DNA of 42,182 nucleotides. It comes from Octopus bimaculoides (lineage: Eukaryota). The DNA lies in NCBI RefSeq assembly GCF_001194135.2, contig NC_068990.1, forward strand, positions 33,196,358 to 33,238,539, in the 5' to 3' direction. Both the position numbers and the translations under genes were made by a program. Below, piece after piece: positions 2,901-35,368 of this stretch; within the stretch, counting starts at the first letter, position 1, and every line of letters begins with the position of its first letter. Under the pieces are notes generated by a model. That model searched no databases and was not told where the DNA came from. It was given only the letters and a program-made list of their open reading frames with translations.

Positions 2901-3460
2901 TTAACCCTTTAGTATTTAAACCAGACACATCCAGCCCAAATATTCTACCTGTTTTATGTTGAAACTGGCTGGTCTGGCCTCTCACACCTACCCTACAATG
3001 TCATTCTAAAAAATAAACAATTACATCACTGAAATCTTGAATTTATGAGATAATGCATGAAAGGCACGTTGCTCAGTGGTTAGATTGTCGGGCTCACATT
3101 CATGATGTTGTGAGTTTGATTCCTGTATTGAGCTGTGTGTTGTGTTCTTGAGCAAGACACTTTATTTCATGTTGCCCAATTCACTCAGTTGTAGAAATGA
3201 GTTGTGACATCACTGGTGCCAAGCTGTATCGGTCACTGCCTTTCCCTTGGATAACATCAATGACGTGGAGTGGAGAGGATGGTATGCATGGGAAACTGCT
3301 GGTCTTCCATAAAACAACCTTGTCCGGTCTTGTGCTTTGGAGTGGAACTTTCTAGGCGTAATCCCATGGTCATTCATGACCAAAAAGGGTCTTTAATTCA
3401 ATACAATGTAAATAAATAAGCATTACATTTGACAGAGTAATCCAAATGCTAACAGGTTAA
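2901..3460. mobile_element. TTAA-flanked piggyBac-like MITE interrupted by a SINE
   Basis: Left end TTAACCCTTTAGTATTT (2901) and right end AAATGCTAACAGGTTAA (ends 3460) are inverted repeats, 14/17 identical, bounded by TTAA. Confidence 0.6.
3061..3392 (+). mobile_element. tRNA-derived SINE (family C) with CORE/Meta-like central domain
   Basis: A box TTGCTCAGTGG and degenerate B box GAGTTTGATTCC, followed by GTGTTCTTGAGCAAGACACTTTATTTC...CACTCAGTTGTAGAAATGAG, which resembles SINE central domains. Confidence 0.6.
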
Positions 3461-4317: not shown

Positions 4318-4500
4318 TAATAATAATAATAATAATAATAATAATGATGATTCTTTCTACTATAGGCACATTGCCTGAAATTTCTGAAATTTTGCAGTGA
4401 GAGGTATTAGCTGATCACATTGACTCCCGTGTTCAACTGGTACTTTCTTTATTGACCCCAAAAGGGATGTAAGGCAAAGCTGACCTCAGTGGAATTTTAA
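4318..4500 (-). mobile_element. SINE family B, 3' part with (TAA)n
   Basis: Homologous to 3727-3867 and adjacent to a (TAA)n tract. Confidence 0.65.
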
Positions 4501-4612
4501 TATCAAATATAAAGAACTGAAAGAAATGCTGCTAATCATTTTGATTGATGCATTAATGATTCTGACAGCTTGCTGCTTTAATAATAATAATAATGATAAT
4601 GATAATAATAAT

Positions 4613-4795
4613 AACATATATAACATACAGAAAATTGCACTACTGGGTACTGCACACATCCTACGCAAAACACTTTCAATACAGTAACCATAAGAGCATC
4701 ACAGCAAACCACAGCACATACCCAAGGCACACAGAGCTGCGCTCAGTAGTGAAGTGAAAACACGTTATAAAAATAAAACTACTGAATGATGATAA
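4613..4795 (+). mobile_element. R4/Dong-type (REL) non-LTR retrotransposon 3' end, copy 1
   Basis: Translates NIYNIQKIALLGTAHILRKTLSIQ* (stop 4685-4687), then a 3' UTR. Flanked by (TAA/GAT)n. Confidence 0.75.
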
Positions 4796-4811
4796 TGATT
4801 ACAATAACCGC

Positions 4812-5283
4812 TTCATTGATATGACTGTCCCAGTTGACATAAATGTATCTGTCAAGACCTACCAAAACCTGAGCAATTATAAAGATCTTGAAATAGAAAT
4901 TGGCAGAATGTGGAACCTCAAGATTAAAACAATACCTGTTGTCATAAGTGTCCTAGGAATGATAGCAAAAGGGGCTGATTCCTACCTAGCTCAGATACCA
5001 AGAAACCCCCAGAATGGCAGAAATTCAAAAAATAGTGCTCATGGGAACTGCCCATATCCCATGTAAAATACTGTCTATGTAATCCATGATTTTAAAGCAA
5101 ACTCATAATTTTCTTATGCTTTCTCAAACATTTTCTAGAACAATACTATGAGCAAAACGAAATATATGACACCCTAGGCGTAATACCAACTTGAACTTCT
5201 AACTTGTTGTCTCTTGAGGTATCTGGGTGAGACTTGGAGTCAACTTGTACAAATACAAAGCGAAAATCAAACATAATAATAAT
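4812..5283 (+). mobile_element. R4/Dong-type REL endonuclease C-terminus plus 3' UTR, copy 2 (frameshifted)
   Basis: FIDMTVPVDINVSVKTYQNLSNYKDLEIEIGRMWNLKIKTIPVVISVLGMIAKG...(+1 fs)RMAEIQKIVLMGTAHIPCKILSM*. This is a restriction-like endonuclease motif, and the copy ends in (AAT)n. Confidence 0.8.
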
Positions 5284-5732
5284 ATATCTGTAAAGGAATT
5301 TGACAAACTAAGTAAATATAAGGCCCTGGAAATTGAAATACAAAAGATGTGGCATCTTAAACGAAGAACTGTTCCTTTTATTGTAGGTGCCTTAAGTATG
5401 ATAAAAAAGGGATATCAGAAACATCTAGAAAAGATCCCAGGAGAACCATGTCTCAGAGAAATCCAAAAGATTGTACTGACAAGTACTACCAACATCCTTA
5501 GAAAAACCCTATCCATTTAAATGTCTGTGTTATATTACATGAAGATATTTTGCTACTTCCCCTCCCCAAGCTTTTAGTCATACTGTAACATCTCTTGTGC
5601 CCTTCTTACAGCTCTAAGAATTTCTTTAACTCCTATTTCTAGCAATATAGGTGCTTCAGCACACTTAGTCACACTTAGTAACGATTAGATATTTCCTTTA
5701 TGGTATTGCATTGCACCTAGCTGTTTATATAT
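5278..5732 (+). mobile_element. R4/Dong-type REL C-terminus plus 3' UTR, copy 3
   Basis: NNISVKEFDKLSKYKALEIEIQKMWHLKRRTVPFIVGALSMIKKGYQKHLEKIPGEPCLREIQKIVLTSTTNILRKTLSI* (stop 5518-5520). The 3' UTR runs into the gap. Confidence 0.8.
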
Positions 5733-7012: not shown

Positions 7013-7185
7013 ATAGGCGCAGGTGTGGTTGTGTGGCAAAAAGCTTGCTTACCAACCATAGTGTTTCAGGTTCAGTCTCACTGTGTGGCACCTTGGACAA
7101 ATAAATGTCTTCTACTGTAGCCTCAGGCTGACCAAAGCCTTGTGAGGGGATTTGGTTGATAGAAACTGAAAGATATCCATCATAT

Positions 7186-7230
<45 letters not shown>

Positions 7231-7565
7231 CATGCACACACGCACATATGTGCATATGTGTATATATGTGTGTGTGTGTATATGTGTATACACACATATG
7301 TGAATATGGGGACATAGACACACCAATCAGTGTTGGTGTGTATATGTGTATACACACATATGTGAATATGGGGACATAGACACACCAATCAGTGTTGGTG
7401 TGTCTATGTCCCCATAACTTAGCAGTTCAACAAAGAAGTTGATAGAATAAGGACTAGACTTTAAAAAATAAGTCCTGAGATCAATTTATTTGACTAAAAC
7501 CCTTCAAGGTGGTGCTCCTGCATGGACACTGTCAAATGACTGAAACAGATAAAAGATGAAAGACA
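7013..7565 (+). mobile_element. SINE family A, full length, central microsatellite with internal duplication and inversion
   Basis: Head ATAGGCGCAGGTGTGGTTGTGTGG...GGTTCAGTCTC (Pol III A/B boxes), central (CA)n, 3' half ending ...ATGACTGAAACAGATAAAAGA. Homologous to 29801 and 35164. Confidence 0.8.
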
Positions 7566-12977: not shown

Positions 12978-13682
12978 TTCTTTTTTTTAATTCCTTTACT
13001 TGTTTCAGTCCTTTGACTGCAGCCATGCAGAAGTACCACCCTTAGCTGAGGAAATAGACCCCAGGGTTTATTCTTTGTAAGCCTAGTACTTATCGGTCTC
13101 TTTTTGCCAAACTGCTACGTTACAGGGATGTAAACACACCAACTTCGGTTGTCAAACAATGGTAGGGGACAAACACAGACATACACACACACACACATGC
13201 ACACCCACGAATACATATATATATATATATATACATATCATCATCATCATCATCATCATCGTTTAACGTCCGCTTTCCATGCTAGCATGGGTTGGACGAT
13301 TTGACTGAGGACTGGTGAAACCGGATGGTAACACCAGCCTCCAATCTGATTTGGCACATGTTTCTACAGCTGGATGCCCTTCCTAACGCCAACCACTCAG
13401 AGAGTGTAGTGGGTGCTTTTACGTGTCACCCGCACGAAGACCAGTCAGGCGGTACTGGCAACGGCCACACTCAAAATGGTGTATTTTATGTGCCACCTGC
13501 ACAAGAGCCAGTCCAGGGGCACTAGCAACGACCTTGCTCGAAAATCCTATGAAGGCCAATCAGGCGGTACTGGCAACGGCCACGCTCAAATGGTGTATTT
13601 TATGTGCCACCCGCACAAGAGTCATATATATATATNNNNNNNNNNCTCAAATGGTGTATTTTATGTGCCACCCGCACAAGAG

Positions 13683-13720
<38 letters not shown>

Positions 13721-13876
13721 GATGGGCTTCTTTCAGTTTCCATTTACCAAATCTACTCACAAGGTTTTGGTCAACCTGAGGCTATAGTAGAAAACACTTG
13801 GCCAAGGTGCCTAGTAGTGGGACTGAACCCAGAACCATGTGGTTGGGAAGCAACCTTCTTACCACACAGCCACACC
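12978..13876 (-). mobile_element. SINE family A split by a nested RTE insertion
   Basis: 3' half at 12978-13200 and 5' half at 13718-13876 are collinear with the intact copy at 35164-35570 (reverse complement). Confidence 0.8.
13238..13624 (-). mobile_element. Young 5'-truncated RTE 3' UTR with internal tandem subrepeat
   Basis: (CAT)n, then CGTTTAACGTCCGCTTTCCATGCTAGCATGGGTTGGACG...CAGCTGGATGCCCTTCCTAACGCC. CpGs are retained. A ~70-nt subrepeat starts at about 13441 and 13555. Confidence 0.8.
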
Positions 13877-14255: not shown

Positions 14256-15098
14256 AATTCTTTAGTGCCCCGCCCATCCCGATCTTCTAGCTCTCCCTTT
14301 CTCCTTAGGCTCCCACCATCTTTCATCATTTACTCTCTTCAGTTATTGAACTGAAGCCATACTTCAGCCATACTTTGCTTTACATTTTTTGGCTGGTACA
14401 GCCCTCTCTCCTATCTATTGTACCATGTTATGATGTATGTTCCGCAGGGTCAAGGGCGAATAGCTAAGCAGGTGTTTGTATTTGCTAATTATTATACAGA
14501 CACTTAAAACAGTCTATTAAAAGCATGTTAACATGTAGCATAATGATGCTCATTTGTGAGTGATTACTGCAGTATATCTTGAATAGGAGACATATTCCAA
14601 GTGTTTCCTTGACTTGTTGCACTGAGTTCAATAGCTCGAGTGTATAAGCTACTTGCTATAATTCAATATTCTTTCCAAATGAAAATTCATTGTAATTTCT
14701 GACATACAAGTCATTGTAGAGGGCAGCATAAGTACGTAGTGTAAATATCTAAACATCTTCACTGTCTTTCCAAATCATTTTGGTCCTCAAAATTTGCTTT
14801 GGTGCATAAGTCAACCTACCCCTTTTTGTTTTCATCATCATCATCATCTTTTATCCTTTTACTTGTTTCAGTCATTTGACTGTGGCCATGCTGGAGCACC
14901 ACCTTAAAGAGATTTTAGTCTAAAAAATTGACCCCAGGACTTATCTTTGTAAGCCTAGTACTTATTCTGTCAGCCTCTTTTGCCAAACTGCTGAGTTACA
15001 GCTACATAAACACACCAACATCAGCTGTCAACATATTTCATATACATATATATATACATAAAGACACACACACACACAAACACATACACACACACACG

Positions 15099-15210
<112 letters not shown>

Positions 15211-15248: not shown

Positions 15249-15337
15249 TACATNNNNNNNNNNNNNNNNNNNNNNNNNNNNNNNNNNNNNNNNNNNNNNN
15301 NATATATATATATATATATATAAATATATATATATAT

Positions 15338-15740
15338 AACGTGAAGTATATTTGCCACTTAAATGCGGCTAAACTCTAAGGGTGAATGTTACTGTTGCTT
15401 TTAGCCCCAGGAAATCATCTCCTCCAGCTGGCTATTGACACACATCTGTGTCCTGTCTGTATTTGCAAAGGGAAGTCATCGTTCCCATCTTGATCATGTG
15501 ATACGTACGGACTCGAGTTTCTGGGTATTTACCCGTCATCAGCATACGACAATCACCGATCTTCGATGTGAAAGATGTCCCAATGCAAATACGTATATAC
15601 TTTTTCCAGTGAAAATATTCACTGATCTCGAAAAAGTGAAAACAAGCAATGTAAATTTCTCTACGAGGTATAAACAGTAACTGCATGACAACGCGAAGTA
15701 TATTTGCCACTTAAATGCGGCTAAACCCTAAGGGTGAATG

Positions 15741-15741
<1 letters not shown>
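15338..15741 (-). mobile_element. Retrozyme-like or Penelope pLTR-like unit: 352-nt monomer plus 52-nt terminal direct repeat
   Basis: AACG(T/C)GAAGTATATTTGCCACTTAAATGCGGCTAAAC(T/C)CTAAGGGTGAATGT at 15338-15389 and 15690-15741 (50/52 identical). Contains an internal hammerhead and has (TA)n on both sides. Confidence 0.7.
15504..15548 (-). ncRNA. Minimal type I hammerhead ribozyme
   Basis: Minus strand reads CGUAUG-CUGAUGA-C-GGGU(AAAU)ACCC-A-GAAA-C(UCGA)G-UC^-CGUACG. It has a complete core, a 6-bp stem I, a palindromic stem III (ACUCGAGU) and a GUC triplet. The 10.1-11.1 pair is a C-A mismatch. Confidence 0.85.
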
Positions 15742-15772
<31 letters not shown>

Positions 15773-16337
15773 AATATATATACACATGCAGCAGGTTTCT
15801 TTCAGTTTCCGTCTATCAAATTCACTCACAAGGCTTTGGTTGGCCCAAGGCTATAGTAGAAGACACTTGCCCAAGATGCCATGCAGTGAGACTGCATCTT
15901 GTTGAGAAGCAAGTATAGAAAATAGTATAGTATACAAAATATTGCGGTTACATGGATGATGCAGTTTGCCTAATAAAGGAGAGCCTCCAGCTAAGCTCAA
16001 AGAAGAAATGCCACAGATCCAGGATCACTGTTATTCTCGAATCTGCAGGCACATGCTTAGAGTAGCTCCATTCCCTCTAACAAATTTCATCAGAGTTACC
16101 GACATTTTGACAATGATATAATACAATACACACATACCTACAAATATGATTACACAATTTTACTGATTTCAGTCACTGACTTGTGACTATGCTGGTGCAT
16201 TACAACCAGCCCCCACTACTTATTTTGTGAATCCATGTTTAGTGAACCACTAAGTTATGCTTTAGGATGCAGTATCAACTTTTTTGCAACTATAGCCACG
16301 AACACAGACAGGTATACAGTCTCTCTCTCCCTTTATA

Positions 16338-17782: not shown

Positions 17783-18074
17783 ATATGTGTTTGTGTGTGT
17801 GTTGTGTTATGTGTGTGTGTGTGTGTGTGAGAGAGAGAGTGTGTGTGTGTATCTTACTGATAAACACTCATGCTCAAACATACACCCACGTATCTCTTTT
17901 TGTGTGTGCACATAAATCTTCAAACTAGAAGCTGAAAATAAAGATTGTTTGCATAGTAATGTTAATTGTTGTTGCTAGAGAAAATTCACTTCTTTTATGC
18001 TAATAATTCTGTTAAGAAACACATATTTACACAATTTCATTTGCCCTCCTTATAGCTCTAAGTTTCTCAATATC

Positions 18075-18270
18075 TGCTAGCAGTATTGTTAATGTGCCAG
18101 ACAGACAATCTCAGCATTTCTTCTGAGTTCAAATGCTATCAAGGTCAGCTTTGTCTTTCCTACATTTGGGGTCAGTTAAATAAATACCCGTCAAGCATTT
18201 GGGTTGATGCAATTAACTACCTTCCCCCTTACAAAGTTTCAGGCCTTGTGCCTGGAGTATAGAGGATTAT
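18075..18270 (+). mobile_element. SINE family B, degenerate near-full copy
   Basis: TTCTGAGTTCAAAT (B box), GGTCAGCTTTGTCTTTC...GGGGTC, ending GGCCTTGTGCC. Confidence 0.6.
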
Positions 18271-18828
18271 AGCCGTGTGCATCTGTGTTTATCTGTAAAA
18301 TAGGATTAGAACCCATATCTAAATATTTAATTTTGCCATTCTTCATCAGAGATAATCTGTTTTGATTGCTGAATTAGATATTAACAAACCTAGAAATAAT
18401 TTTGAATCACTGTATTTGTGTTGCCATAACCAAATACTGTAATTTATTCCATAAGTTTTACTTACAAGGCCACCAGTATCTGGGTACTCAAACTTGCCAG
18501 AAATAGCAACCAATTACCCATCAAATCACACAATTGTCTTTAAATGGGTATAAAAACAGATGGCATGATTGTAGCTAGAACATTGTTCTACTCAATCAGA
18601 GCTGATCTGGGTTAAACAGCAACAAGTCCATAAGAAGCAAAAATAAAGGTGACCAACTGGGCATAAACAAAGTACAAAAGCATGGCAGCTGCACACAGAG
18701 TATGGTGCATTGATCCAATAGATAGCAATGCTGGATGTCTAAAAAGCTGTACATGTACTGTGGCAGTGATACAATAAGAGGGATAGTATTTGCCTTTGAA
18801 TAACTCTTGCTTTCAACTATGAGGTAAA

Positions 18829-19048
18829 TATCAAGGGGTGCTAAAAAGTTCCTGGCTTTAAGGATATTGCAAAAGGTCTGGCTGGAGGCCCTACCTTCCA
18901 AGTTCTTTTACAGGGCTTAAAAAAACTGAAGGGGTGCTGCAGTAAGTGAGTGAATCTGAGATGGGATATGTTCGATAAAATCATAATTAACTGATTCTCC
19001 CGTATTTTCTTTTACTCAAAGCTGGGAACTTTTCAATATTGCCTTGTA
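18829..19048. mobile_element. mariner-derived MITE or internal-deletion derivative
   Basis: Ends (TA)TCAAGGGGTGCTAAAAAGTTCCTGGCTTT and AAAGCTGGGAACTTTTCAATATTGCCTTG(TA) are imperfect TIRs with TA boundaries. Confidence 0.6.
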
Positions 19049-19187
19049 TATTCTGCCATCTCTCCTATCACCTGTCATGTCTTTGATGCTCTGCTGGGTC
19101 AAAAGTGTGTGTGTGTGTGTGTGTTTGTGTATCTATCTATAACTATCAATCTCTGTTTCTCTGTCTGTCTGTCTGTCTGTCTGTCAA

Positions 19188-19219
<32 letters not shown>

Positions 19220-20491
19220 CAGGGGTTGGACAAAATGATGAAAGCATCATAGCATCATAATTTTGAAGTATCTTTAAAACTGTCAAAAGTTTGTTTATTT
19301 TTATGTTTTTTATTTATTTATTATTAGTGTTGCTTAATACGTTTTGCTAAAATTGCTGTTTCTGTTCAGATATTATCAGAAAAAAGGTAATTAAAATTCA
19401 TAAAAATGACAGATCTATCGGACTTTCAAAGAGATCAAATTGTTGGTGCTCGTATGGCAGGTGCTAGCGTAACGAAGACAGCCAAAATGTTTGACGTATC
19501 AAGANNNNNNNNNNNNNNNNNNNNNNNNNNNNNNNNNNNNNNNNNNNNNNNNNNNNNNNNNNNNNNNNNNNNNNNNNNNNNNNNNNNNNNNNNNNNNNNN
19601 NNNNNNNNNNNNNNNNNNNNNNNNNNNNNNNNNNNNNNNNNNNNNNNNNNNNNNNNNNNNNNNNNNNNNNNNNNNNNNNNNNNNNNNNNNNNNNNNNNNN
19701 NNNNNNNNNNNNNNNNNNNNNNNNNNNNNNNNNNNNNNNNNNNNNNNNNNNNNNNNNNNNNNNNNNNNNNNNNNNNNNNNNNNNNNNNNNNNNNNNNNNN
19801 NNNNNNNNNNNNNNNNNNNNNNNNNNNNNNNNNNNGGAGTAAAAACCTACAGAATTGGTTACTAGAGCAGTGGAAGAATGTTATTTTCTCGGACGAGTCA
19901 TGCTTTACCTTATTTCCAACCATCGGCTGAGTATACATGTGGAGACAGTCAAAAGAAGCATTTGACTCAGACTGCCTTCTTTTAACTGTTAAACAAGGAG
20001 GAGGATCTGTGATGATCTGGGGAGCTATATCTTGGAAATCCACCGGCCCAATGGTTTCCCTTCATGGCAGAATTAATAGTTAGAACAATTTAGCATATTA
20101 TCTGATCAAATTCATCCTAAGGTTGCAGAACTGTTTCTAGAGGGAAATGCAATCTTTCAGGATGATAATGCAACAATTCACATAGCTAAAGTTGTTACTG
20201 AATGGCACGAGGAACATTCTAGTGAAGTTGAACATCTTATCTGGCCACCACAGTCCCCAGATCTCAATATTATTTGAACATTTTTGGTGCATTTTAGAAA
20301 AACAGGTAAGGAGTGAATATCACTATAAGAACTGGAGACTGCTTTAGCTGTGAAGAATGGACAAAAATTCCTTTGGAAACGATTGAAACTTTGAATTTAA
20401 GCCATAATTACTGCCAAAGGCGGTCCTACCCCATATTAAAATAAATTTGTCTACAATTCTAAGGTGCTTCTATTATTTTATCCAGCTCCTG
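19220..20491 (+). mobile_element. Tc1/mariner transposon, DD36E (Incomer-like), about 1.27 kb including the gap
   Basis: 29-nt TIRs CAGGGGTTGGACAAAATGATGAAAGCATC and GGTGCTTCTATTATTTTATCCAGCTCCTG (22/29). TA follows the right end, and the left TA reads TG. Confidence 0.9.
19406..20439 (+). pseudogene. Disrupted DD36E transposase
   Basis: MTDLSDFQRDQIVGARMAGASVTKTAKMFDVSR...[gap]...WKNVIFSDES (D 19892)...FQDDNATIH (D 20164)...WPPQSPDLNII(+1)E (20276)...GGPTPY*. Contains in-frame stops and frameshifts. Confidence 0.9.
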
Positions 20492-20541
20492 TATATAAAT
20501 ATATACATATATGTGTATGTATGTGCATATAAATTCATGTA

Positions 20542-20623
<82 letters not shown>

Positions 20624-21852
20624 GAGATTCATAGACAGACAGATATAAATGTAATTGCACAAACAACGAAAAATTCCTTCCTATAAACAAACCTTCTCTA
20701 TATATCATGCTTAACATGAAATATGCATCTTGTGTGTGTAGGTGTGTGTGTACATGCATGCATGCACATGTATTTGTGTGCATGCATGCATGTACACACA
20801 CAAACACACACATGTGCATGTATGAATGGAATATTTATGCAAGTGCTTTTATATGTCTACATGTGTGTGTGTGTGCATGCGCATGCATGTGTGTGCATGT
20901 ATATCTGTAAATTACTACCACCATTTATCAGTGTGCAAGGGTAGAAGAGAGAATATTTAACAATAACCTATCAGAATCTAAAGTTGCCATATTTTACAGA
21001 CTCCAGGGTAAAAAGCTTCTTATGTAGAGAGAGGACAACTCCTTTCAATTAACCTTGCCTACTAAGGTTAGAATCATCCTCACTCATCATCTCATTCTTC
21101 ATCTCACCATGCTTCATCATCTCTCTCTCTCTCTCAATGTTTTCTGAACCTAGACATTATATTGAGACAGAGAGACTGGCACAGATGAATTGTCTACATT
21201 TTTAATAAAGAAATCTTGTCAAAATATAGCAAACTTGTGTTGTAGAATGATGATGATCTGTCTGAAATTGTTATAGTCACTGGCAAGAAAATATATATAT
21301 ATATATGTATATTTATGTATTATAAATACATATATATATATATATATATAATGTTGGAAACTAGAGATCGACGAATCTAATAATAAAATATAATACAAAA
21401 AGAAGATTAAAAATTGTTCCCTGTTATGAATTCTTGTTAGGATGTTGCGGAATGGAGTCATTTTGAGAATCTTGTTTATTCGTTTTTTATATATGTATGT
21501 ATATATATATATATAAATNNNNNNNNNNNNNNNNNNNNNNNNNNNNNNNNNNNNNNNNNNNNNNNNNNNNNNNNNNNNNNNNNNNNNNNNNNNNNNNNNN
21601 NNNNNNNNNNNNNNNNNNNNNNNNNNNNNNNNNNNNNNNNNNNNNNNNNNNNNNNNNNNNNNNNNNNNNNNNNNNNNNNNNNNNNNNNNNNNNNNNNNNN
21701 NNNNNNNNNNNNNNNNNNNNNNNNNNNNNNNNNNNNNNNNNNNNNNNNNNNNNNNNNNNNNNNNNNNNNNNNNNNNNNNNNNNNNNNNNNNNNNNNNNNN
21801 NNNNNNNNNNNNNNNNNNNNNNNNNNNNNNNNNNNNNNNNNNNNNNNNNNNN

Positions 21853-21933
<81 letters not shown>

Positions 21934-22284
21934 ACACACACGCACACACACACACACACATGCTGATAGTTTAATGTTATGTCTATGCAAATATGTGTGT
22001 GAATGCATGTATGCGTATTATATGTTTGTGTGCGGCTGTATAGGAATGTGTACATGTGTATATTTATATTTGTGTATATATGTATACTGGTATGTGTATA
22101 CATGTATATATGTCAAAATCCCCCCATCTCTCTCTCTCTTTTTGCCCTTCTTTCTCTTTTGCTATCTCTCTATATATCTTTGTTAGTCTTTCTTTCATTG
22201 CTTCCAGTTATATGCATGACATTAATTATTGCCTGTATGATAACTTTAATCAAATACCACCATCTCCATCATTAGCTTCTATGT

Positions 22285-22315
<31 letters not shown>

Positions 22316-22659
22316 CCACTACCATTACTGTCATTAATTCTAGTAACATCCCCATTGCCATTACAATCTTAGCCAACACCATCACTGCCACCATCATTGC
22401 TATCACCTGACAGGAGATATATTTATATGAAGTATTCTGGTGTTTGCCTAGCGAATATTTGTCGATGTTGTTAGAGGTGTAAATAAACCCTTAAGTAGAT
22501 TGGGTAATGTCTGTAGAGGAGGAAGGGAGAGTATGTTGGATGATAAAACACAGTAGGAACACAGTTGTCTTGTATTGGGGTTAAGGATTCGTGGTAGCAC
22601 ATAACTTGGAAAGGGATTCAAGATGAATTGGTGTGGAAATAGTAGATAGAAAGAGTGTG

Positions 22660-22778
22660 TTGGTACTTGTTTTATTGACCCTGAAGGGATCAAAAGTAAA
22701 GTTGCCTTTGACAGAATTTGAATTCAGGACATGAAGATGGATGAAGTACTACTAACAATTCTGCCAGTTCACAGCTTA
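22660..22778 (-). mobile_element. SINE family B, 5' part
   Basis: TTGGTACTTGTTTTATTGACCC...AGAATTTGAATTCAGGAC...TTCTGCCAGTTCAC. Confidence 0.6.

Positions 22779-22828
<50 letters not shown>
22779..22828. repeat. (TAA)n microsatellite (tail of the adjacent SINE B)
   Basis: Direct reading. Confidence 0.9.
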
Positions 22829-22831
<3 letters not shown>

Positions 22832-22834
22832 CAA

Positions 22835-23025
22835 CTTCAAAATTTGGCACAAGGCCAGTAATTTTTTAGTGGGAGGAGGTAAGCCAATTACATCGATCCC
22901 AGTACTGGACTGGTACTTTATTTTATTGATTCCCAAAAAGCAAAGTTGAACTTGGTGGGGTTTGAACTGGGAATGTAAAGAGCCAATAGAAATGCTGTTA
23001 ACAGTTCTGCCAGTTCACTACCTTA
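22835..23025 (-). mobile_element. SINE family B, near full length
   Basis: Reverse strand has an A-box-like TGGCAGAACTG, B box CAGTTCAAACC, and 3' end GCCTTGTGCCAAATTTTGAA. Confidence 0.7.
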
Positions 23026-23199
23026 AGAATGATGGTAAGGTGGTGGAGGAGGAGGAGGAGGATAGAGTGATACTATTTATAAAAGGAATTAATCAGGAAT
23101 AAATCTATGTAGACTTGGCAGAAGAATGTGTGAATGGGAGGTGGGGGGAGACACAGCTTAAACGAAACCAATTACTGTCTGTGGATTTCTGCAGAATTC

Positions 23200-23975
23200 A
23201 TTGGAAAAGGTCAAATTCTTTTAGTTGAGAAAAAAATCTTCAGTTAGAACTTCAAGTGATTCAATGAAGAAATCTTTGATACTAAATGTTTTCTCTTGGT
23301 GCAAATATTTTAAGCACTTTTGCAAATGCTCAGATTGTTTTGGCTCAAGAAACTTATATTTTTCAATATATGTTGTTGCTTAGAAAATGGAATATAGTGT
23401 TCAGCTTCCTAGATATCCTTCACTCAGATGCGTGGGAAGTGGTTGTGATTTGTACAAACTGGTATTATTACAAAAACCAATCTGCACTCTGGCTCTTGTC
23501 TATTGTTAAAGGATAACTTGAGATATTAATATGGATGACCGTTTTGATTCTCAAATTTTTCTTGCCACATTCTGTTGCCTTGCTAACAGTAAAGTCCTGA
23601 GTAGGACATTTTCCCAGGTGATTTAGAATGATGTGTTTGTCAGCAAGTGTTCCTTGTGGCAGCTATGTAGTTTTTGGAAGTTACTTCTGACATAGTAACA
23701 ATTGCATCTATTGCAGACGATTTGGCTTCTTGCATAGGCCCTTGAACACATGGTTACACTATTGATGAAGCAGATGGCTAGTGTTTACACCTTTTTGCTA
23801 CCTGTTGGCCAAATTGCAAATTGGAATGTCATCAAGAGATACTGGTATGCATCATCTGAATGTTCTTTTCCTATCTATAGATCACTCAGTGGACTCCAGC
23901 AATAATTCTACCATCAGAATAAAGCAGCTTCATGAAACACATACCGTCTTTGCAGGTGTGGGCCTTCCTTCATAA
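23200..23975 (-). mobile_element. Penelope-like element relic 1 (RT C-terminus, linker, GIY-YIG endonuclease)
   Basis: Frameshifted minus-strand peptides FMKLLYSD..., AICF...SQIVCNRCNCYYVRSNFQKLHSCHKEHL and ILNHLGKCPTQDFTVSKATECGKKNLRIKTVIHIN fit the PLE GIY-YIG pattern VYxIxCxxCxxxY(I/V)GxT..L..R..EH. Confidence 0.65.
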
Positions 23976-24638
23976 GAAAGATGTATTAACCCTCAAATAC
24001 TGGTGGTCTAACATAAAATGTAAACTTTTGTTCTGTTTTCATTACTTCATTTTCACTTCTGTAGTTTAATTGGCTTTGTATTGGTTTTTAAACAATTTTG
24101 AGTTTAAATATTATATCATACTTCACTGAAACTACACTGCATTGATAAGCTGTTCACTTTGTAACTCTGTGGATTTGAGTTCCATCTCATTGAGTAGCAC
24201 CATGGCAAGTGTCTGCATGAAAATGTTGAGCTAAAATCAGAGATGTTTATCAACTTTCCCTGTCAATAAAATAATCCTTTAGCTCTATGTCCATGAGGGT
24301 GCTTGGCTGTTCAAACACCTTAGCCTCACCGCTGCCCATGGTAATGCCACAAGCATGTTGGCTTGCTTCAGTAGGTTCCTGTTGTGGTGTGCACTTGGTG
24401 TTGAATTGGTGTTTTTCCTTTTTTCATCTTTTTTGTTTTTTTTTGTTTTTCTTTTGGAAAGTATAGTCCGTTTCACTGAAATTTTGCAAATTGTAACAAG
24501 CAGAATTTATTTTGACTTTCAAAGACATGTTGAAGGCAAAAGTAGGTATGGGTTAGACAAAGAAAGGGCTACTGGCTGTATAACAATGCTTCAAGGATAT
24601 GTATTTATTCAGCTCATGTTCGCATAGAAAAGCAGATA

Positions 24639-24700
<62 letters not shown>

Positions 24701-24954
24701 TGCATGTGAGCATGTACATGTGTGCATGCATGCGTGTGTGTGCACATGCATGCATGTATGTGTATCAGTGGCATATTGTGGTTGTTGTCTCAAGGCATGC
24801 TGCTGTTCAGAACCGAACACCCTGACATCAATATTTCTTAGAATAACACAAAAAAAAAACCTGTAAGCTATGTCTATGTATATTATGATTTAAAACCTGA
24901 CTTAATTTTTGTTTCTAAGTGTGTATTATAAAGTTTGAAAACAAATTAGGAACA

Positions 24955-25076
24955 TTATTTAGGTCACTGCCTGGAATCGAACTCGGAATCTTAGGGTTAG
25001 TAGCCCGTGCTCTTAACCACTATGCCATATGCCTGTGGGCATATGGTGTGGTTACCTGAGTAATAATAATAATAAT
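24955..25076. mobile_element. Short head-to-head tRNA-derived retroposon with a 12-bp TSD
   Basis: TSD AAATTAGGAACA at 24943-24954 and 25077-25088. Minus-strand A box TGGCATAGTGG and B box GAGTTCGATTCC. Central inverted repeat and (AAT)n tail. Confidence 0.7.
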
Positions 25077-25221
25077 AAATTAGGAACAGTTTATATAAGG
25101 AATTTCAGTATCAGTTAATGCATTTTCCTCAATGTTTTCCACCAGGAAAATGAATACAGGATTTGTGCTGTTCAAACAAGGTTTATGCATGGTTTCTTAT
25201 GTAATTCTTAGGATTAACTGA

Positions 25222-25243
25222 CCAATCATCCAGTGCCACGTCA
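25222..25243 (+). promoter_or_regulatory. Exact ERSE (CCAAT-N9-CCACG) overlapping a UPRE-like CCACGTCA
   Basis: CCAAT 25222-25226, CATCCAGTG, CCACG 25236-25240, TCA. This is a motif match only; no linked gene was identified. Confidence 0.3.
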
Positions 25244-25481
25244 TGATATAGTTTATTGTCAGAGGTACAGGTCTATCACAAAACAACTGCCATAAGTATT
25301 TATATGGTATTTGCCTCACAACACGGTTTTGAACGGGTTATTGTTGACTGAGTTGTAGTATTGTGGTTCGTCTCTAAATTAGTTATATACATATATATTA
25401 TATATTACGAAACTCGTTGCAATGTTATACTGAATTTTACCTGTATGGTTGGAATAATTTTTTATTCCCTAATATTATTAC

Positions 25482-25529
<48 letters not shown>

Positions 25530-25530
<1 letters not shown>

Positions 25531-25680
25531 TGGCATCTTTTAGTTTCTGTCTACTAAATCTACTCAGAAGGCTTTTGTTGGCCTGAGTTATAGTAGAAGA
25601 CACTTGTTCAAAGTGTCACATTGTAGGACTGAACCTGAGATCACGTGGTTAGGAGGTAAAGTTCTCAACCACACTACCAT
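25530..25680 (-). mobile_element. SINE family A, 5' half
   Basis: TTTTAGTTTCTGTCTACTAAATC...TATAGTAGAAGACACTTG...GGACTGAACC...ACCACAC. Confidence 0.7.
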
Positions 25681-25734
25681 GTGTGCGTGTGTGTGCATAA
25701 AGGGCATGGAAATATTCCTTAGTACTGCTATCAC

Positions 25735-25925
25735 AATAAATGCACCCAGTACACTTTGTAAAATGGTTGGTGTTGGAATGGGGAACCAGTCGCAGAAACC
25801 AAGCTAAAATGAAACTTTCAAGTTTGATGTAGTTCTCATCCCCTCACCTAGGTGTCCAGTAATGCCCCATCCAACTCATGGAATGTGGAACCATGATGAT
25901 GATAATGATGATGATGATGATGGTG
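25735..25925 (+). mobile_element. RTE 3' end remnant with (GAT)n tail
   Basis: GCACCCAGTACACTTTGTAAAATGGTTGGTGTTGGAATGGGG...CCATCCAACTCATGG...(GAT)n. Confidence 0.5.
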
Positions 25926-26473
25926 GCATGTGTGTGTATGTATTTATCCAGTCCTGTCCAGAATAATAGAATGCCAGCCAGTCCAGCAATTATGCTTGAT
26001 AGGAAAGATAATGGAAGAAAAAGAAACAACAATAAACAGAAACAACACCACCAATAACAGTAAATATCCGATAAAAACACCACCACCCCCACAGAACCAG
26101 AATGCTGCATCGTTCATCTAAAACTATAATCCCCAAATATTTGATAATGTTACAAATGCAATATGGTTAGGAAATGTGCCAATAAAACTTTTCTCGTAAA
26201 ACCATTATCATAACCATCATCACAGCGTTCATCACTATCAGCATAACAGACCTTGTTCACACAACAACAGTAGACAAGACTAAATTGAGAGGATAATAAA
26301 TAGAAAACATACATAAATATAAACCAATCGACAACACAACTTTCAGACCTCGACCAACTTACTGAGATATGTCTTCTACAACACCTCTATTTAGATAAAT
26401 TTATATCTATAATTTTTGTGTGTCCATGTATGCACGTATTCATGTCTGTGTTTGCATGCATGTGTAAGGATGT

Positions 26474-26507
<34 letters not shown>

Positions 26508-26509
<2 letters not shown>

Positions 26510-26885
26510 GCACAGCACTGTGGTAAGAAGTTTGTTTCCCAATCACAAGGTTTTGGGTTCAGTCTTATTGTGTGGTACTTTGGGCAAGTGTCATCTACTA
26601 TTCTGCTTTAGCTCCAGGCTGACCAAAGCTTTGAGAGTGGATTGGGAAGTTCAAAAGTGAAAGAATCTCATCATATAAATATGCATATGAATATATACAT
26701 GTGAATATATACTTGTGTGCATGTGTGTGTGTGTGTGTGTGTGTGTGCTAAAATCCTTGCCTTGACATCACATGATATTTGTAAATGAGTGTCATCATCA
26801 TCCAAGCTCTGTTCTTTGTTTCCAAGCTTCCATGAAAACATGTCTGATCATGGGGGAGATATTATATTACTTGGAAACAGGTGAC
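26508..26885 (+). mobile_element. SINE with family A head and a different 3' half
   Basis: Family A head and body up to the microsatellite, then a 3' segment (CCTTGACATCACATG...TTGGAAACAGGTGA) unlike the other A copies. Confidence 0.55.
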
Positions 26886-27003
26886 TAGAAGTGTAACCAC
26901 CCTAGAAAATTTGCCTCAACTAATTTCATGTAACTTTTGTGAGCATGGAAAAGTGGACATTAAAAACAACGATGATGATAAGTGTGTGTGTGTGTGTGTG
27001 TGT

Positions 27004-27036
<33 letters not shown>

Positions 27037-28220
27037 TGAGAGAGAGAGAGAGTGAGAGAGAGAGAGAGTGAGTGAGTGAGGGAGTGGAGTGTGTATAGAG
27101 TCAGCAGATGAGATCCAGATATGCTCAATATAGAAAACACTTAGTAGTGCTCAAATAATTTGAACTTAGACTCTGAAATTTATGAAGTCCATGGAAGTGG
27201 CTATAAGAGGAATCCAGGTGAGCTGATATGGAGATAATGATACAAATAAACAAATAAACACACCTAGGCTCCATCTGCCAACATTACAACTATTACATAA
27301 TTCTGAGCCCCCAGAAACAGCTGTATTGGACCTGAAATACCATACCCTCTCCTCTTAGCTTTCTGTATCTTTGTACTTCTTGTAGATCTGTTCTATAATT
27401 TTATATAAATAAATTATATAAATATCTATATGCTTATATATGAATGTTCATCTTCTGAATATTTCTAGTTTTTCTTCTCTTTTATATCTAACTCTTATGA
27501 GACAACATTTTTTGAATAAACTTTGGAAGTGTCAAATGTGTTTGGTATTTTATAGACAAGAAAGAAAATTTTGAATGCAATATGGATGTGAAAACAACAG
27601 AAAGATTGAGTATTTTACTCTTATAAGACAGAAAAGGTTGTTACATTCCAAAATCTATAACCATTTAGCATTAAAATTGACAGTAATTGCTGTCAGGGGG
27701 CTGTTTAGCTTAATGGCAGAGTACTTAGCTGGTATCTAAGGGATTCAGGTTCAAGTCTTGTCACCACCTGCTGGCAACTTTTTCTGGATAAAAATAATCA
27801 ATTTTTCTGCTGTTTTCACAGTTATCCTGCATTCGAAATTTATTTTCTTGTCTGTAAAATATTCCCATATATATTTCCATGAATATATGTTACATGAATA
27901 TATGTATGTATATTTTATATATCAAGCTGATGCATGGTTATTTGTTTATTTGCATCACTATCTCTCTCTCTATATATATATATATATGTATATATAATTA
28001 TCTTAATAGTCATATTTACATGGTGGCATGGGTCAGTCATGTCTGCTTTCAAAACATCACCTTTCCACTTCATACTAGTCCTTCGTCATCACCTTTGTAA
28101 GGCTCAATATCCTGGAGTTATCCTGTCCACCCCTTATGTCACCTTCAGTTTTCCTCTATTGCAAACTCTTTCCATTTTACATTGACATATGTAAATACAT
28201 GTGTGTGTGTGTGCATGTGT

Positions 28221-28255
<35 letters not shown>

Positions 28256-28308
28256 TGTGTACATACACATATACATTTATCTATACAAAAATTGGAAATA
28301 GAGTTTTT

Positions 28309-29040
28309 GACGTTTTAAACAGAATCTTTCTTCGGATGACAGAGAAAATGGAAAAAAAAAAAAAATAAAAAACCAGAGCTTTCATCCTCTATATTAAAGA
28401 ATCTTTCAGCAACTGATAGGGAACACAACAAGTATGAATGTCTAGATAAATAGTGTGAAGTGGGAGAAAGAAATTTGGTAAGGTGCAAGAGAAAGAAAAA
28501 GCAGAGAATCTGGATGATGTTGAAGTAGAAGGAAAATAAAAGCAAGGGAGGACGCAATGAATAAAGCAGAAATTACAGTACAAGAATGAGTTGATGGGGT
28601 AGAAGGAAAGACATTAATTTAAGATGATAGGGGTTATGATTCTGAGTCAGAATATGAAATGGTCTTCCTGGTTTTCTTGAGTGTGAATCTTCACACATGG
28701 TTTGCATAAATTCTGGTCACTGAGAAGTGGGTAATGGAACCCATTGTGCTGAAGTCAGTGGCCAGAGGTTAGTTTGGCATAAGTAGTTATGAATGTGTAC
28801 ATGAGGGCAATTGGCGAAGTAACATAACAACTCATTTCACCAATGTTAAAAGCACCACAGGGTTTGTAAGTGGTGCAATATACGATTATGTCAGATGTAC
28901 TTCAAAAGTTTTGCATACTGTGGTATTGTAACTCAGCTCTGATAATGGTTGTGGCACTGTTGATTGACAAGTGTTGCATTTATGGTGAGTGCATTTAAAG
29001 TGCTTGATTGTGTGTTGCTGGGCGGCATGGAGGTTCTAAG
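28309..29040 (-). mobile_element. Penelope-like element relic 2 (Zn-linker, GIY-YIG, 3' UTR with decayed hammerhead-like motifs)
   Basis: Minus-strand FKCTHHKCNTC (28999-28967), SDIIVYCTTYKPCGAFNIGEMS (~28895-28830) and EDHFIF*LRIITPIILN* (~28672-28615). Confidence 0.7.
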
Positions 29041-32824: not shown

Positions 32825-33136
32825 TAGGAGTGGCTGTGTGGTAAGTAGCTTTTTTACGAACCACATGGTTCCGGGTTCAGTCCCACTGTGTGGCACCTTG
32901 GGCAAGTGTCTTCTACTATAGCCTCGGGCCGACCAAAGCCTTGTGAGTGGATTTGGTAGACGGAAACTGAAAGAAGCCCGTCNNNNNNNNNNCTTAGTGG
33001 TTCGGCAAAAGAGACCGATTGAATAAGTACTAGGCTTCCAAATAATAAGTCCTGCGGTCGATTTGCTCGACTAAAAGCGGTGCTCTCGCATGGCCACAGT
33101 CAAATGACTGAAACAAGTAAAAGAGTAAAAAGAGTA
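32825..33136 (+). mobile_element. SINE family A (centre collapsed in a 10-N gap)
   Basis: Highly similar to 35164-35570. Confidence 0.85.

Positions 33137-35337: not shown

Positions 35338-35368
<31 letters not shown>

What the first reader, a model, noticed from the sequence alone, without database searches (positions are those of the whole stretch)
15338..15741. Retrozyme-like unit: 352-nt hammerhead-containing monomer with 52-nt terminal redundancy
Seen: a 52-nt direct repeat (50/52) spaced 352 nt apart brackets a CpG-retaining, non-microsatellite block. The block carries one hammerhead on the minus strand and is embedded in (TA)n. It therefore equals about 1.15 copies of a circularly permuted 352-nt unit whose ends do not coincide with the cleavage site. 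Established: metazoan non-LTR retrozymes are short tandem units (roughly 170-400 nt) with type I hammerheads that yield circRNAs, and Penelope pLTRs carry minimal hammerheads. Inference: this is a genomic copy made by reverse transcription going slightly more than once round a circular RNA, or from a multimer, possibly mobilised by Penelope RT. Penelope relics occur in this window. I know of no description of this family in cephalopods, but I cannot check novelty.
Basis: partly seen in the sequence, partly recalled or inferred. Interest (0 to 1): 0.9.

Follow-up and report, generated by a model that had tools for sequence, protein, structure and literature searches.

The report
Hammerhead ribozyme mobile element copy
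A 404-base insert inside a TA-repeat is about 1.15 copies of a 352-base non-coding mobile element that carries a self-cutting hammerhead RNA and has thousands of relatives in the same genome; it is a new example of an already known kind (animal 'retrozymes'), not a new kind of thing.

Summary
There is a 52-nt direct repeat (50/52) spaced 352 nt apart, with one hammerhead on the minus strand (15504-15548, cleavage between 15510 and 15509). The block lies in the (TA)n tract of a SINE.

The hammerhead is not a chance match: the descriptor gave 0 hits in 300 random windows. It has the canonical metazoan type I build, with helix I of 6 bp, helix II of 4 bp, and helix III of 2 bp plus a palindromic tetraloop. 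It is predicted to fold correctly only as a dimer.

The locus is not an assembly artefact, because single-copy-depth unitigs span the internal junction. The unit is not single-copy: roughly 2,000-3,000 hammerhead-bearing relatives at 80% identity or more, and an 84-nt 3' segment in tens of thousands of copies, under four organism labels. Across the family the fixed core never varies, N7 varies freely, and helix I changes keep pairing.

Many copies share this copy's 3' end next to (TA)n or A/T-rich DNA. Its 5' end is not shared.

Best reading: a non-autonomous hammerhead retroelement (non-LTR retrozyme) copy with Penelope-style terminal redundancy. With one hammerhead it is probably inert.

Circular RNA, the mobilising enzyme and the "Penelope relics" are not shown. 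This is a new member of a known kind.

The parts
15338..15689 (-). One full 352-nt unit, read on the minus (ribozyme-sense) strand from 15689 down to 15338. Non-coding, 41% G+C, CpG-rich for this genome.
   Evidence: Period 352. No protein homologues and no Pfam hit for its 92-aa ORF. G+C and CpG. The sense strand folds to -110 kcal/mol, z = -4.9.
15690..15741 (-). Upstream partial copy: a repeat of the last 52 nt of the unit. This is the terminal redundancy, pLTR-like. Its outer edge (15741) is the copy-specific 5' end.
   Evidence: 50/52 match to 15338-15389. Family reads that reach 15741 continue with 15390-like sequence, not with (TA)n.
15338..15389 (-). 3'-terminal 52 nt of the full unit. 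The end at 15338 (...CUUCACGUU-3' on the sense strand) is a terminus shared by other family copies.
   Evidence: Unitig 15328-15362 across the (TA)n|terminus junction has about 30 times single-copy depth. Loose ends left of 15695 (the equivalent place) are heterogeneous, (TA)n or A/T-rich.
15504..15548 (-). Type I hammerhead ribozyme. Helix I is 6 bp (CGUAUG/CGUACG). Core is CUGAUGA...GAAA. Helix II is 4 bp (GGGU/ACCC, loop AAAU, with a C.A at its base). Helix III is A-U and C-G capped by UCGA, so ACUCGAGU is a palindrome.
   Evidence: Descriptor scan with 0/300 random hits. The dimer cofold adopts the double hammerhead. Family variation spares the core.
15509..15510 (-). Predicted self-cleavage site: GUC(15510)^C(15509).
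   Evidence: Position after the GUC triplet in the motif. Not tested biochemically.
15461..15590 (-). Long imperfect hairpin that extends helix I beyond a small internal loop (UGU/U). The hammerhead sits at its tip.
   Evidence: Minimum-free-energy and centroid folds of the 352-nt sense strand and the circular fold.
15302..15337 (.). Left (TA)n flank. Part of the target microsatellite. Continues beyond the N gap 15254-15301.
15742..15763 (.). Right (TA)n flank. Part of the target microsatellite.
14853..15134 (-). 3' half of the host SINE copy whose internal (TA)n/(CA)n tract received the insertion.
   Evidence: Aligns to positions 35330-35570 of the intact SINE copy at 35166-35570.
15742..15894 (-). 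5' half of the same host SINE copy, including its part of the microsatellite.
   Evidence: Aligns to positions 35224-35360 of the intact SINE copy.

Best explanation
This is one dispersed copy of a non-autonomous, non-coding retroelement of the animal 'non-LTR retrozyme' kind. The unit is 352 nt and carries a canonical type I hammerhead.

Steps shown or inferred:
1. Shown: the element belongs to a large family. About 2,000-3,000 hammerhead-bearing copies are at least 80% alike, and its 3' part occurs in tens of thousands of copies. The family's hammerhead core is kept intact.
2. Shown: this copy was inserted into the (TA)n tract of a SINE. Its sense 3' end is the family's usual terminus next to (TA)n or A/T-rich DNA. 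Its 5' end overshoots one unit by 52 nt.
3. Inferred: it was made by target-primed reverse transcription that started at a fixed site of the RNA and copied 1.15 rounds of a circular or multimeric template, or jumped to a second template. This gives the same partial-tandem ('pseudo-LTR') layout as Penelope-like elements. The enzyme was supplied in trans. A Penelope-like RT with a GIY-YIG nuclease that prefers (TA)n is the most likely source (about 0.5).
4. Inferred from folding and from established hammerhead biology: helix III is too weak in a monomer. Two hammerheads, from neighbouring units of a multimeric transcript, pair through the palindrome ACUCGAGU and cut after GUC. This releases 352-nt monomers that a tRNA ligase could circularise.
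5. Consequence: this locus has only one hammerhead. It cannot release a monomer by itself and is probably an inert copy.
For: Repeat and period.

Hammerhead:
- Motif, and 0/300 chance hits.
- The architecture equals the 'canonical metazoan type I' description: helix I 6 bp, helix II 4 bp, helix III 1-2 bp with a small palindromic loop, active as a dimer (PMC4209133, read).
- The monomer hammerhead fold is -5.6 kcal/mol against an alternative fold at -10.5. The dimer cofold at -27.7 forms two hammerheads with an 8-bp intermolecular helix III.

Copy number:
- Summed unitig depth over the ribozyme is 75,000-128,000 in X2 (single-copy about 45) and 18,000-29,000 in X4 (single-copy about 10).
- Raw DNA reads agree within about 3-fold.
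- Near-identical words are held by runs under four organism labels.

Selection on the ribozyme, in about 800 DNA reads per run:
- None of the 12 fixed core positions has a variant at 8% or more, against 16 of 33 other positions (Fisher p = 0.0018).
- N7 is changed in about 70% of reads.
- Helix I changes preserve pairing: U.G->C-G 82%, A-U->G.U/G-C, G-C->A-U.

Locus is real: an exact 60-mer unitig spans the internal junction (15664-15723) at single-copy depth in X2. The same unitig with 2 mismatches occurs in X4 and X7.

Ends:
- The (TA)n|terminus unitig has about 30 times single-copy depth.
- Heterogeneous (TA)n or A/T-rich flanks at the terminus number about as many as internal junctions: 367 vs 335 reads in X23, 282 vs 199 in X24.
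- Reads crossing 15741 continue into the unit.

Other:
- No ORF, and no protein homologues.
- Highly self-paired RNA: z = -4.9, 64% paired.
- Known context: mussel retrozymes of 350-390 bp with about 5,000 hammerheads (PMC7229834). (TA)n insertion bias and pseudo-LTRs of Penelope-like elements (PMC8557442). Retrozymes related to Penelope pLTRs (bioRxiv 10.64898/2026.07.22.740005).
Against: - No circular RNA was shown. RNA reads and contigs cover the family in both orientations, cross the cleavage site and show no pile-up of ends there. They give no back-joint that is not also in DNA.
- RNA depth roughly follows DNA copy number. This looks like background transcription, though the libraries may be poly(A)-selected.
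- This locus has only 1.15 units and one ribozyme. I could not count how many loci have two or more hammerheads.
- Rfam's hammerhead models do not score the motif.
- No autonomous partner was identified. No Penelope RT or GIY-YIG trace was found in the window.
- Some termini abut A-rich rather than (TA)n DNA, so a LINE-type enzyme is not excluded.
- The apparent helix I compensatory pair (15547/15505) lies in two CpGs and could be parallel CpG decay. Linkage within reads could not be checked.
- The family consensus could not be rebuilt, because no genome of this organism was reachable.
Confidence: 0.72

Rival explanations
1. Hammerhead-carrying SINE-like element moved by a LINE enzyme, not by a Penelope-like element, as proposed for Schistosoma Sm-alpha. 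The terminal redundancy would arise from template switching during LINE-type target-primed reverse transcription.
For: Depth falls from the 3' part towards the 5' part of the unit, as with 5' truncation: about 29,500 at 15394-15421 against about 600 at the ribozyme in X23. Some copies abut A-rich DNA at the 3' terminus. LINE relics are present in the window.
Against: No A-tail or simple-repeat tail lies at the element's own 3' end. The preference for (TA)n and the partial-tandem layout are the hallmarks reported for Penelope-like elements (PMC8557442). The depth profile is not monotonic, since it rises again at 15604-15659.
Confidence: 0.15
2. Solo pseudo-LTR or other fragment of an autonomous Penelope-like element, so nothing beyond an ordinary Penelope relic.
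For: Hammerhead plus partial tandem plus (TA)n target all occur in Penelope-like elements.
Against: The sequence closes on itself with a 352-nt period and no ORF. It is flanked directly by the two halves of a SINE. Family reads run continuously through the junction, with no dominant continuation into other sequence. The ribozyme is the canonical type I form, not the minimal form described for metazoan pLTRs (helix II 7-8 bp, helix I 4-5 bp, no helix III; PMC4209133). There are no RT or GIY-YIG motifs in the window.
Confidence: 0.07
3. Left-over of a hammerhead satellite array, trimmed to 1.15 units by deletion or unequal exchange rather than inserted as such.
For: Hammerhead repeats of about 330-350 bp form long arrays in newts and axolotl (PMC7229834). 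Junction-spanning reads exist in this genome.
Against: The block interrupts one SINE copy exactly within its (TA)n tract. Its 3' edge is the recurrent family terminus. Termini are about as frequent as junctions, which does not fit long arrays.
Confidence: 0.04
4. Assembly artefact or recent local duplication of 52 nt.
For: Draft assembly with many N gaps, one only 36 nt from the block. At 99% identity the 2015 runs leave 15664-15679 uncovered.
Against: An exact 60-nt unitig spans 15664-15723 at single-copy depth in X2. The same unitig with two mismatches occurs in X4 and X7. Single-copy unitigs also cover 15386-15443 and 15518-15574. The same junction sequence occurs in hundreds of raw reads from other copies.
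Confidence: 0.02

Closest known systems
Non-LTR retrozymes of invertebrates, especially those of the mussel Mytilus galloprovincialis (Cervera & de la Pena 2020, PMC7229834)
   Same: Non-coding unit of 350-390 bp against 352 here. Low G+C. Thousands of type I hammerheads per genome. Highly self-paired RNA. Head-to-tail junctions present in the genome.
   Different: In the mussel, circular RNAs were shown by northern blot and RT-PCR, and the units are described as tandem repeats. Here the locus is a dispersed 1.15-mer with one ribozyme and no circle has been shown. I also see a fixed 3' terminus next to (TA)n. The parts of that paper I read do not report such a terminus.
Axolotl and newt satellite-2 type retrozymes (Rtz_331 / Rtz_353; HHR_Amex2)
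   Same: Unit of about 330-350 nt. Helix III is reduced to 1-2 bp with a palindromic tetraloop, so the ribozyme cleaves well only as a dimer. Loop 2 has the N-AAAUA form; that detail is from my own memory and was not tested.
   Different: The amphibian elements form very large arrays (about 126,000 motifs). No sequence similarity was tested.
Penelope-like elements and their pseudo-LTRs with hammerheads (PMC4209133, PMC8557442)
   Same: A partial upstream copy gives terminal redundancy. Insertion into microsatellites, with (TA)n reported for Naiad and proposed for Neptune. A hammerhead that needs dimerisation.
   Different: No RT/GIY-YIG ORF. The 52-nt redundancy does not contain the ribozyme. 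The ribozyme is canonical, not 'minimal'. Naiads, the (TA)n-preferring clade reported in Octopus spp., lack hammerheads.
Schistosoma Sm-alpha hammerhead SINE-like repeats (from my own knowledge; also cited in PMC4209133)
   Same: A short, dispersed, high-copy, non-coding repeat carrying a canonical type I hammerhead.
   Different: Sm-alpha is described as a SINE-like element. No pol III promoter boxes or tail were looked for or seen here, and T4-T5 runs inside the sense strand argue against pol III transcription.

Membership tests
Metazoan non-LTR retrozyme | Type I hammerhead with an intact catalytic core (CUGANGA, GAAA, cleavage triplet NUH) | tested here: met
   15504-15548 minus strand. 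Descriptor scan gave 0/300 random windows. The core is invariant across family reads.
Metazoan non-LTR retrozyme | Canonical helix sizes: helix I about 6 bp then loop 1, helix II about 4 bp, short helix III with a palindromic loop. Loop 1-loop 2 tertiary contacts. | tested here: inconclusive
   Helix sizes are met: 6 bp, 4 bp, and 2 bp plus UCGA. An internal loop UGU/U follows helix I. The tertiary-contact nucleotides cannot be judged from sequence with these tools. The mussel retrozyme hammerheads also lack the conserved ones.
Metazoan non-LTR retrozyme | Short (about 170-400 nt), low-G+C, non-coding unit | tested here: met
   352 nt and 41% G+C. No protein homologue and no Pfam hit.
Metazoan non-LTR retrozyme | Units arranged head to tail (dimers to multimers), so that a monomer lies between two hammerheads | tested here: inconclusive
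   This locus has 1.15 units and one hammerhead. In the family, junction-spanning reads and unitigs exist, about one per terminus. The number of loci with two or more hammerheads could not be counted.
Metazoan non-LTR retrozyme | Multi-copy and dispersed in the genome | tested here: met
   About 2,000-3,000 ribozyme-bearing copies at 80% identity or more, with heterogeneous flanks.
Metazoan non-LTR retrozyme | Expressed as monomer-length circular RNA joined at the cleavage site | tested here: inconclusive
   RNA reads and contigs contain the family and cross the site. There is no pile-up of ends and no RNA-only back-joint. No rRNA-depleted or RNase R library could be found.
Metazoan non-LTR retrozyme | Self-cleavage activity of the transcript | not testable with these tools
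   Only folding is available: the dimer adopts the active double-hammerhead fold and the monomer prefers another fold.
Penelope-like element (pLTR or non-autonomous derivative) | Partial upstream tandem copy giving pseudo-LTRs | tested here: met
   52 nt of the unit's 3' end are repeated upstream of the full unit.
Penelope-like element (pLTR or non-autonomous derivative) | Hammerhead located in each pseudo-LTR | tested here: not met
   The 52-nt repeats carry no ribozyme. The single hammerhead lies 171-180 nt from either end of the unit.
Penelope-like element (pLTR or non-autonomous derivative) | RT plus GIY-YIG ORF between the repeats (autonomous element) | tested here: not met
   No ORF with homologues. 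The block is flanked by SINE halves. No RT or GIY-YIG motifs anywhere in the window by a crude regular-expression screen.
Penelope-like element (pLTR or non-autonomous derivative) | Sequence similarity of the unit to the pLTR or 3' end of an autonomous element of the same genome | not tested
   No genome or repeat library of this organism was reachable. The ENA contig fetched through a protein hit came from another organism, with no SINE and no unit.
Penelope-like element (pLTR or non-autonomous derivative) | Insertion bias for microsatellites such as (TA)n | tested here: met
   This copy lies in (TA)n. The exact (TA)n|terminus unitig has about 30 times single-copy depth. Flanks of other termini are (TA)n or A/T-rich.
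Rfam Hammerhead_1 (RF00163) and other Rfam hammerhead models | Score at or above the gathering threshold | tested here: not met
   No hammerhead family is listed even at E <= 10 on 15300-15780. The very short helix III probably costs the score. That explanation is my inference.
Hammerhead satellite DNA (newt satellite 2 type) | Long uninterrupted tandem arrays | tested here: not met
   1.15 units at this locus. Termini are about as common as junctions in the reads.

The most novel reading that the evidence does not exclude
This would be the first described cephalopod retrozyme family, active recently given its CpG-rich, about 2% diverged copies. Its copies would start at one fixed RNA site that lies half a unit away from the ribozyme cut and would land in (TA)n. 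If so, the template must have been a religated circle or an uncut multimer. The element would then give a natural system to show that a (TA)n-targeting Penelope-like enzyme, possibly a hammerhead-less Naiad, reverse-transcribes circular ribozyme RNAs. It would also show that retrozymes parasitise Penelope-like elements that carry no ribozyme of their own.
Probability: 0.25. Interest if true: 0.55.

Novelty: new member of a known kind. Interest (0 to 1): 0.35.

Why it matters
Retrozymes are a known, widespread class. How their RNA is turned back into DNA is still inferred rather than shown.

This family offers two useful handles. It has a fixed 3' terminus that does not coincide with the ribozyme cut. 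It also has a clear preference for (TA)n or A/T-rich targets, with Penelope-style terminal overshoot. Together they point to a circular or multimeric template and a microsatellite-targeting enzyme.

For genome annotation, it identifies a high-copy repeat that standard Rfam scans miss. The ribozyme-bearing part occurs thousands of times, and its 3' segment occurs in tens of thousands of copies.

It changes no general concept.

Tried and rejected
- Rfam at gathering threshold and at E <= 10: no hammerhead hit. The motif was verified with my own descriptor instead.
- The 92-aa spurious ORF of the unit, used as a handle to fetch other copies from the protein collection: no candidate.
- A LINE-tail ORF as a handle gave an ENA contig. 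That contig has neither the SINE nor the unit and so comes from another organism. Sampling the same genome this way was abandoned.
- Search for rRNA-depleted RNA libraries holding the unit: none listed.
- Penelope relics: no convincing RT or GIY-YIG ORF by eye among stop-to-stop ORFs. A regular-expression screen of all six frames found nothing. Pfam on candidate ORFs found nothing. A whole-window profile scan was not run.
- Strand bias of RNA reads: inconsistent between runs, so uninformative.
- Reading the helix I 15547/15505 double change as firm covariation was rejected. Both sites are CpG positions and linkage within reads is unknown. Subfamily consensus ends (CACACG.../CGUGU...) do fit compensatory change, but they come from separate read sets.
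- A terminus of the very abundant 84-nt segment at 15351/15352: the depth step is sharp, but no loose-end consensus was listed. It is left unexplained.

Full report
**What is there.** The region reads as described. The tracts 15338-15389 and 15690-15741 are a 52-nt direct repeat with two mismatches, spaced 352 nt apart. BLAST gives E = 2e-19 within the window. The 404-nt block is bounded on both sides by (TA)n. A 48-N scaffold gap lies in the left microsatellite, 36 nt from the block.

At each of the two mismatches (15342/15694 and 15375/15727), one copy carries the base seen in about 97% of family reads. The two copies were therefore most likely identical when inserted, and each has since changed once. 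The block has 16 CpGs, observed/expected 0.95, against 0.26 for the window. Both observations fit a fairly young insertion.

**The ribozyme.** On the minus strand, 15548 down to 15504 reads CGUAUG-CUGAUGA-C-GGGU-AAAU-ACCC-A-GAAA-C-UCGA-G-UC^CGUACG. I wrote a structural descriptor requiring:
- helix I of at least 5 bp;
- CUGANGA;
- helix II of 3-6 bp;
- GAAA;
- a short helix III;
- U and then a non-G.

The descriptor finds this single site in the window and nothing in 300 first-order-Markov random windows. Rfam lists no hammerhead family here, even at E <= 10.

The architecture matches what Cervera and de la Pena call the canonical metazoan type I hammerhead: helix I 6 bp, helix II 4 bp, helix III 1-2 bp with a small palindromic loop, active as a dimer. 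It does not match the 'minimal' form of Penelope pLTRs, which has helix II of 7-8 bp, helix I of 4-5 bp and no helix III (PMC4209133).

Folding agrees. Alone, the 45-mer prefers a non-hammerhead fold (-10.5 kcal/mol against -5.6 for the hammerhead fold). Two molecules together give a double hammerhead as the minimum-energy structure (-27.7 kcal/mol), with an 8-bp intermolecular helix III formed by the palindrome ACUCGAGU.

In the 352-nt sense strand, helix I continues past a small internal loop into a long imperfect hairpin (about 15461-15590). The whole RNA folds to -110 kcal/mol (z = -4.9, 64% paired). The complementary strand is also strongly structured (z = -5.0), as expected for a hairpin-rich sequence.

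**Not an artefact, not single-copy.**
- Locus support. Unitigs of the 2015 runs cover 15386-15443 and 15518-15574 exactly, at a depth of about 10, which I take as single-copy depth there. The internal junction 15664-15723 is an exact 60-nt unitig at depth 45 in a 2022 run. The same unitig with two mismatches occurs at depth 10-17.6 in two 2015 runs.
- Copy number from unitigs. Summed unitig depth at 80% identity or more over the ribozyme is 75,000-128,000 in X2 and 18,000-29,000 in X4. This gives roughly 2,000-3,000 copies.
- Least conserved stretch. 15576-15589 gives about 300-400 copies.
- Most abundant stretch. 15394-15421 gives 40,000-96,000 copies.
- Raw reads. A 2026 DNA run gives 600-800 reads deep over the ribozyme and about 29,500 over 15394-15421, from 1.93 Gb read. 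For a genome of 2-3 Gb this is the same order. That genome size is my assumption for an octopod, since organism names were coded.
- Spread. Runs under four organism labels hold near-identical 31-mers, and organism B shows the same depth profile.

**The family keeps the ribozyme intact.** I tabulated variants in about 800 DNA reads per run laid on 15486-15566.
- None of the 12 fixed core positions has a variant at 8% or more. Sixteen of the 33 other positions of the motif do (Fisher p = 0.0018).
- The one free core position, N7 (15538), is changed in about 70% of reads, to all three other bases.
- Helix I changes keep pairing: U.G to C-G at 15544 (82%), A-U to G.U or G-C at 15506/15546, G-C to G.U at 15509, and G-C to A-U at 15547/15505.
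- The last pair lies in two CpGs, and I could not check linkage within reads, so I do not count it as firm covariation.
- Helix III variants (ACUCGGGU, ACCCGGGU) remain self-complementary, allowing for G.U.

**Ends and target.** The block splits one minus-oriented SINE copy exactly in its internal (TA)n/(CA)n tract. The SINE halves are 14853-15134 and 15742-15894.

The sense 3' end (...GGCAAAUAUACUUCACGUU at 15338) recurs in other copies:
- An exact unitig across (TA)n|terminus (15328-15362) has about 30 times single-copy depth.
- At the equivalent place in the second repeat, about 367 reads (X23) and 282 reads (X24) carry heterogeneous A/T-rich sequence. About 335 and 199 continue with unit-internal sequence.
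- Unitig flanks there read ...ATATATATATAATGT| or are A-rich.

Reads that reach the other end (15741) continue into 15390-like sequence rather than into (TA)n. The 3' end is therefore a family terminus, and the 5' end is particular to this copy.

About one terminus per internal junction suggests that typical copies are one to two units long, not long arrays. Target-site duplication cannot be read in a microsatellite. The same difficulty is noted for Penelope-like elements (PMC8557442).

**RNA.**
- Three 2026 RNA runs and several older transcriptome assemblies contain the family, including the ribozyme.
- Coverage is in both orientations and roughly proportional to DNA copy number.
- Reads cross the cleavage site, and no excess of ends is reported there.
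- The few 'goes back' joints are also present in DNA.
- No rRNA-depleted library could be found.

Circular RNA is therefore neither shown nor excluded.

**Mechanism.** Shown: a conserved dimer-type hammerhead in a non-coding 352-nt unit, a large dispersed family, a fixed 3' terminus, A/T-rich or (TA)n targets, and a 52-nt overshoot at the 5' side.

Inferred: multimeric transcripts from loci with two or more units are cut by double hammerheads into 352-nt monomers. These may be circularised, as established for other retrozymes (PMC7229834). An enzyme supplied in trans nicks the microsatellite and starts cDNA synthesis at the fixed site. It then runs 1.15 rounds on a circle or multimer, or jumps to a second template.

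The fixed start lies 171 nt from the ribozyme cut, so a simple cut linear monomer cannot have been the template for this copy. The partial-tandem layout and the (TA)n preference are those reported for Penelope-like elements. A 2026 preprint argues that animal retrozymes derive from Penelope pLTRs. I put Penelope-type mobilisation at about 0.5 and a LINE-type enzyme at about 0.15.

With only one dimer-dependent hammerhead, this locus itself is probably inert.

**Comparison and novelty.** The closest described relatives are the mussel retrozymes, with 350-390-bp units and about 5,000 hammerheads. It also resembles the amphibian repeats with a two-base-pair helix III.

It is not a Penelope pLTR in the strict sense. 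There is no ORF, the redundancy lacks the ribozyme, and the ribozyme type differs.

I found no paper in the held library that describes hammerhead retrozymes in octopus or other cephalopods. The giant squid genome paper merely lists 235 Rfam hammerhead hits (PMC6962438). The finding is a new member of a known kind.

No RT or GIY-YIG motifs were found. The RT-tail-like ORFs at 4758-5063, 5218-5517 and 41972-42181 have homologues that sit downstream of RVT_1 and zf-RVT domains, which is LINE-like.

Noticed in passing
window 35118-35163 (+): A second hammerhead fragment of a related subfamily: CGUACG-CUGAAGA-AGGG-AAAUAA-CCCU-GAAAC-UCGG-GUC, 80% identical to the unit's ribozyme. It stops exactly at the GUC cleavage site, with no 3' strand of helix I. 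It is wedged between the (GAT)n tail of another retroposon and the head of a SINE. It could be a short retro-copy of a self-cleaved RNA 3' end, or the match of its end to the cut site could be coincidence.
   Followed up: partly
window 35166-35570 (+); other copies at 29801-30187, 32825-33124, 12990-13238 with 13689-13876, 7015-7173 with 7393-7556, 25493-25650, 26519-26738, 34433-34618, 41477-41697: A SINE of about 400 bp with an internal (TA)n/(TG)n microsatellite occurs at least 8 times in 42 kb. Its microsatellite acts as a landing pad. It received the hammerhead unit at 15338-15741, and a (GAT)n-tailed retroposon sits inside another SINE copy at about 13240-13690.
   Followed up: partly
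window 15352-15435: This 84-nt segment near the unit's 3' end is far more abundant than the rest: about 29,500 reads deep against about 600 at the ribozyme. The depth step at 15351/15352 is sharp, but no loose-end consensus was reported there. It could be a much larger 5'-truncated or divergent relative, or a different element sharing this tail. Left unresolved.
   Followed up: partly
reads adjoining window 15351, 15395 and 15434: Hundreds of reads join family sequence to a perfect palindrome, GGTTCGTCCATCGATCGATGGACGAACC. Many 'opposite strands' joints occur around 15433. This suggests inverted head-to-head arrangements or a palindromic partner sequence in some copies.
   Followed up: no
window 4758-5063 (+), 5218-5517 (+), 41972-42181 (-), 4484-4684 (+): Short ORFs with the motif ...KDLEIEI..MW.LK...IPV(I/V)VG.LG.I.KG...L..IP.......QK..L.GT..ILRK.LS. 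Homologues (86-174 aa, no Pfam) are common in ENA assemblies. In one fetched contig the ORF lies just downstream of RVT_1 and zf-RVT ORFs, so these are 3' tails of a LINE-like element, not Penelope.
   Followed up: partly
window 19406-19930 (+): A Tc1/mariner-like transposase remnant (N-terminal helix-turn-helix, then ...DESCFTLFP...), interrupted by an N gap at 19505-19835. The Pfam HTH hits are only weak.
   Followed up: partly
window 27699-27769 (+): A tRNA-like sequence (Rfam tRNA, 36.5 bits, E = 3.5e-4) with several non-standard pairs in the acceptor stem. It is possibly a tRNA-derived repeat or a pseudogene.
   Followed up: no
window about 13420-13700 (-): A roughly 60-70-nt motif (...gactcttgtgcgggtggcacataaaatacaccatttgag...) is repeated three to four times in tandem inside the (GAT)n-tailed retroposon, across a 10-N gap.
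   Followed up: no
whole window: There are eleven N gaps (10-947 nt), nearly all inside microsatellites. CpG observed/expected is only 0.26 overall. Young insertions such as the hammerhead unit stand out by their CpG content.
   Followed up: partly
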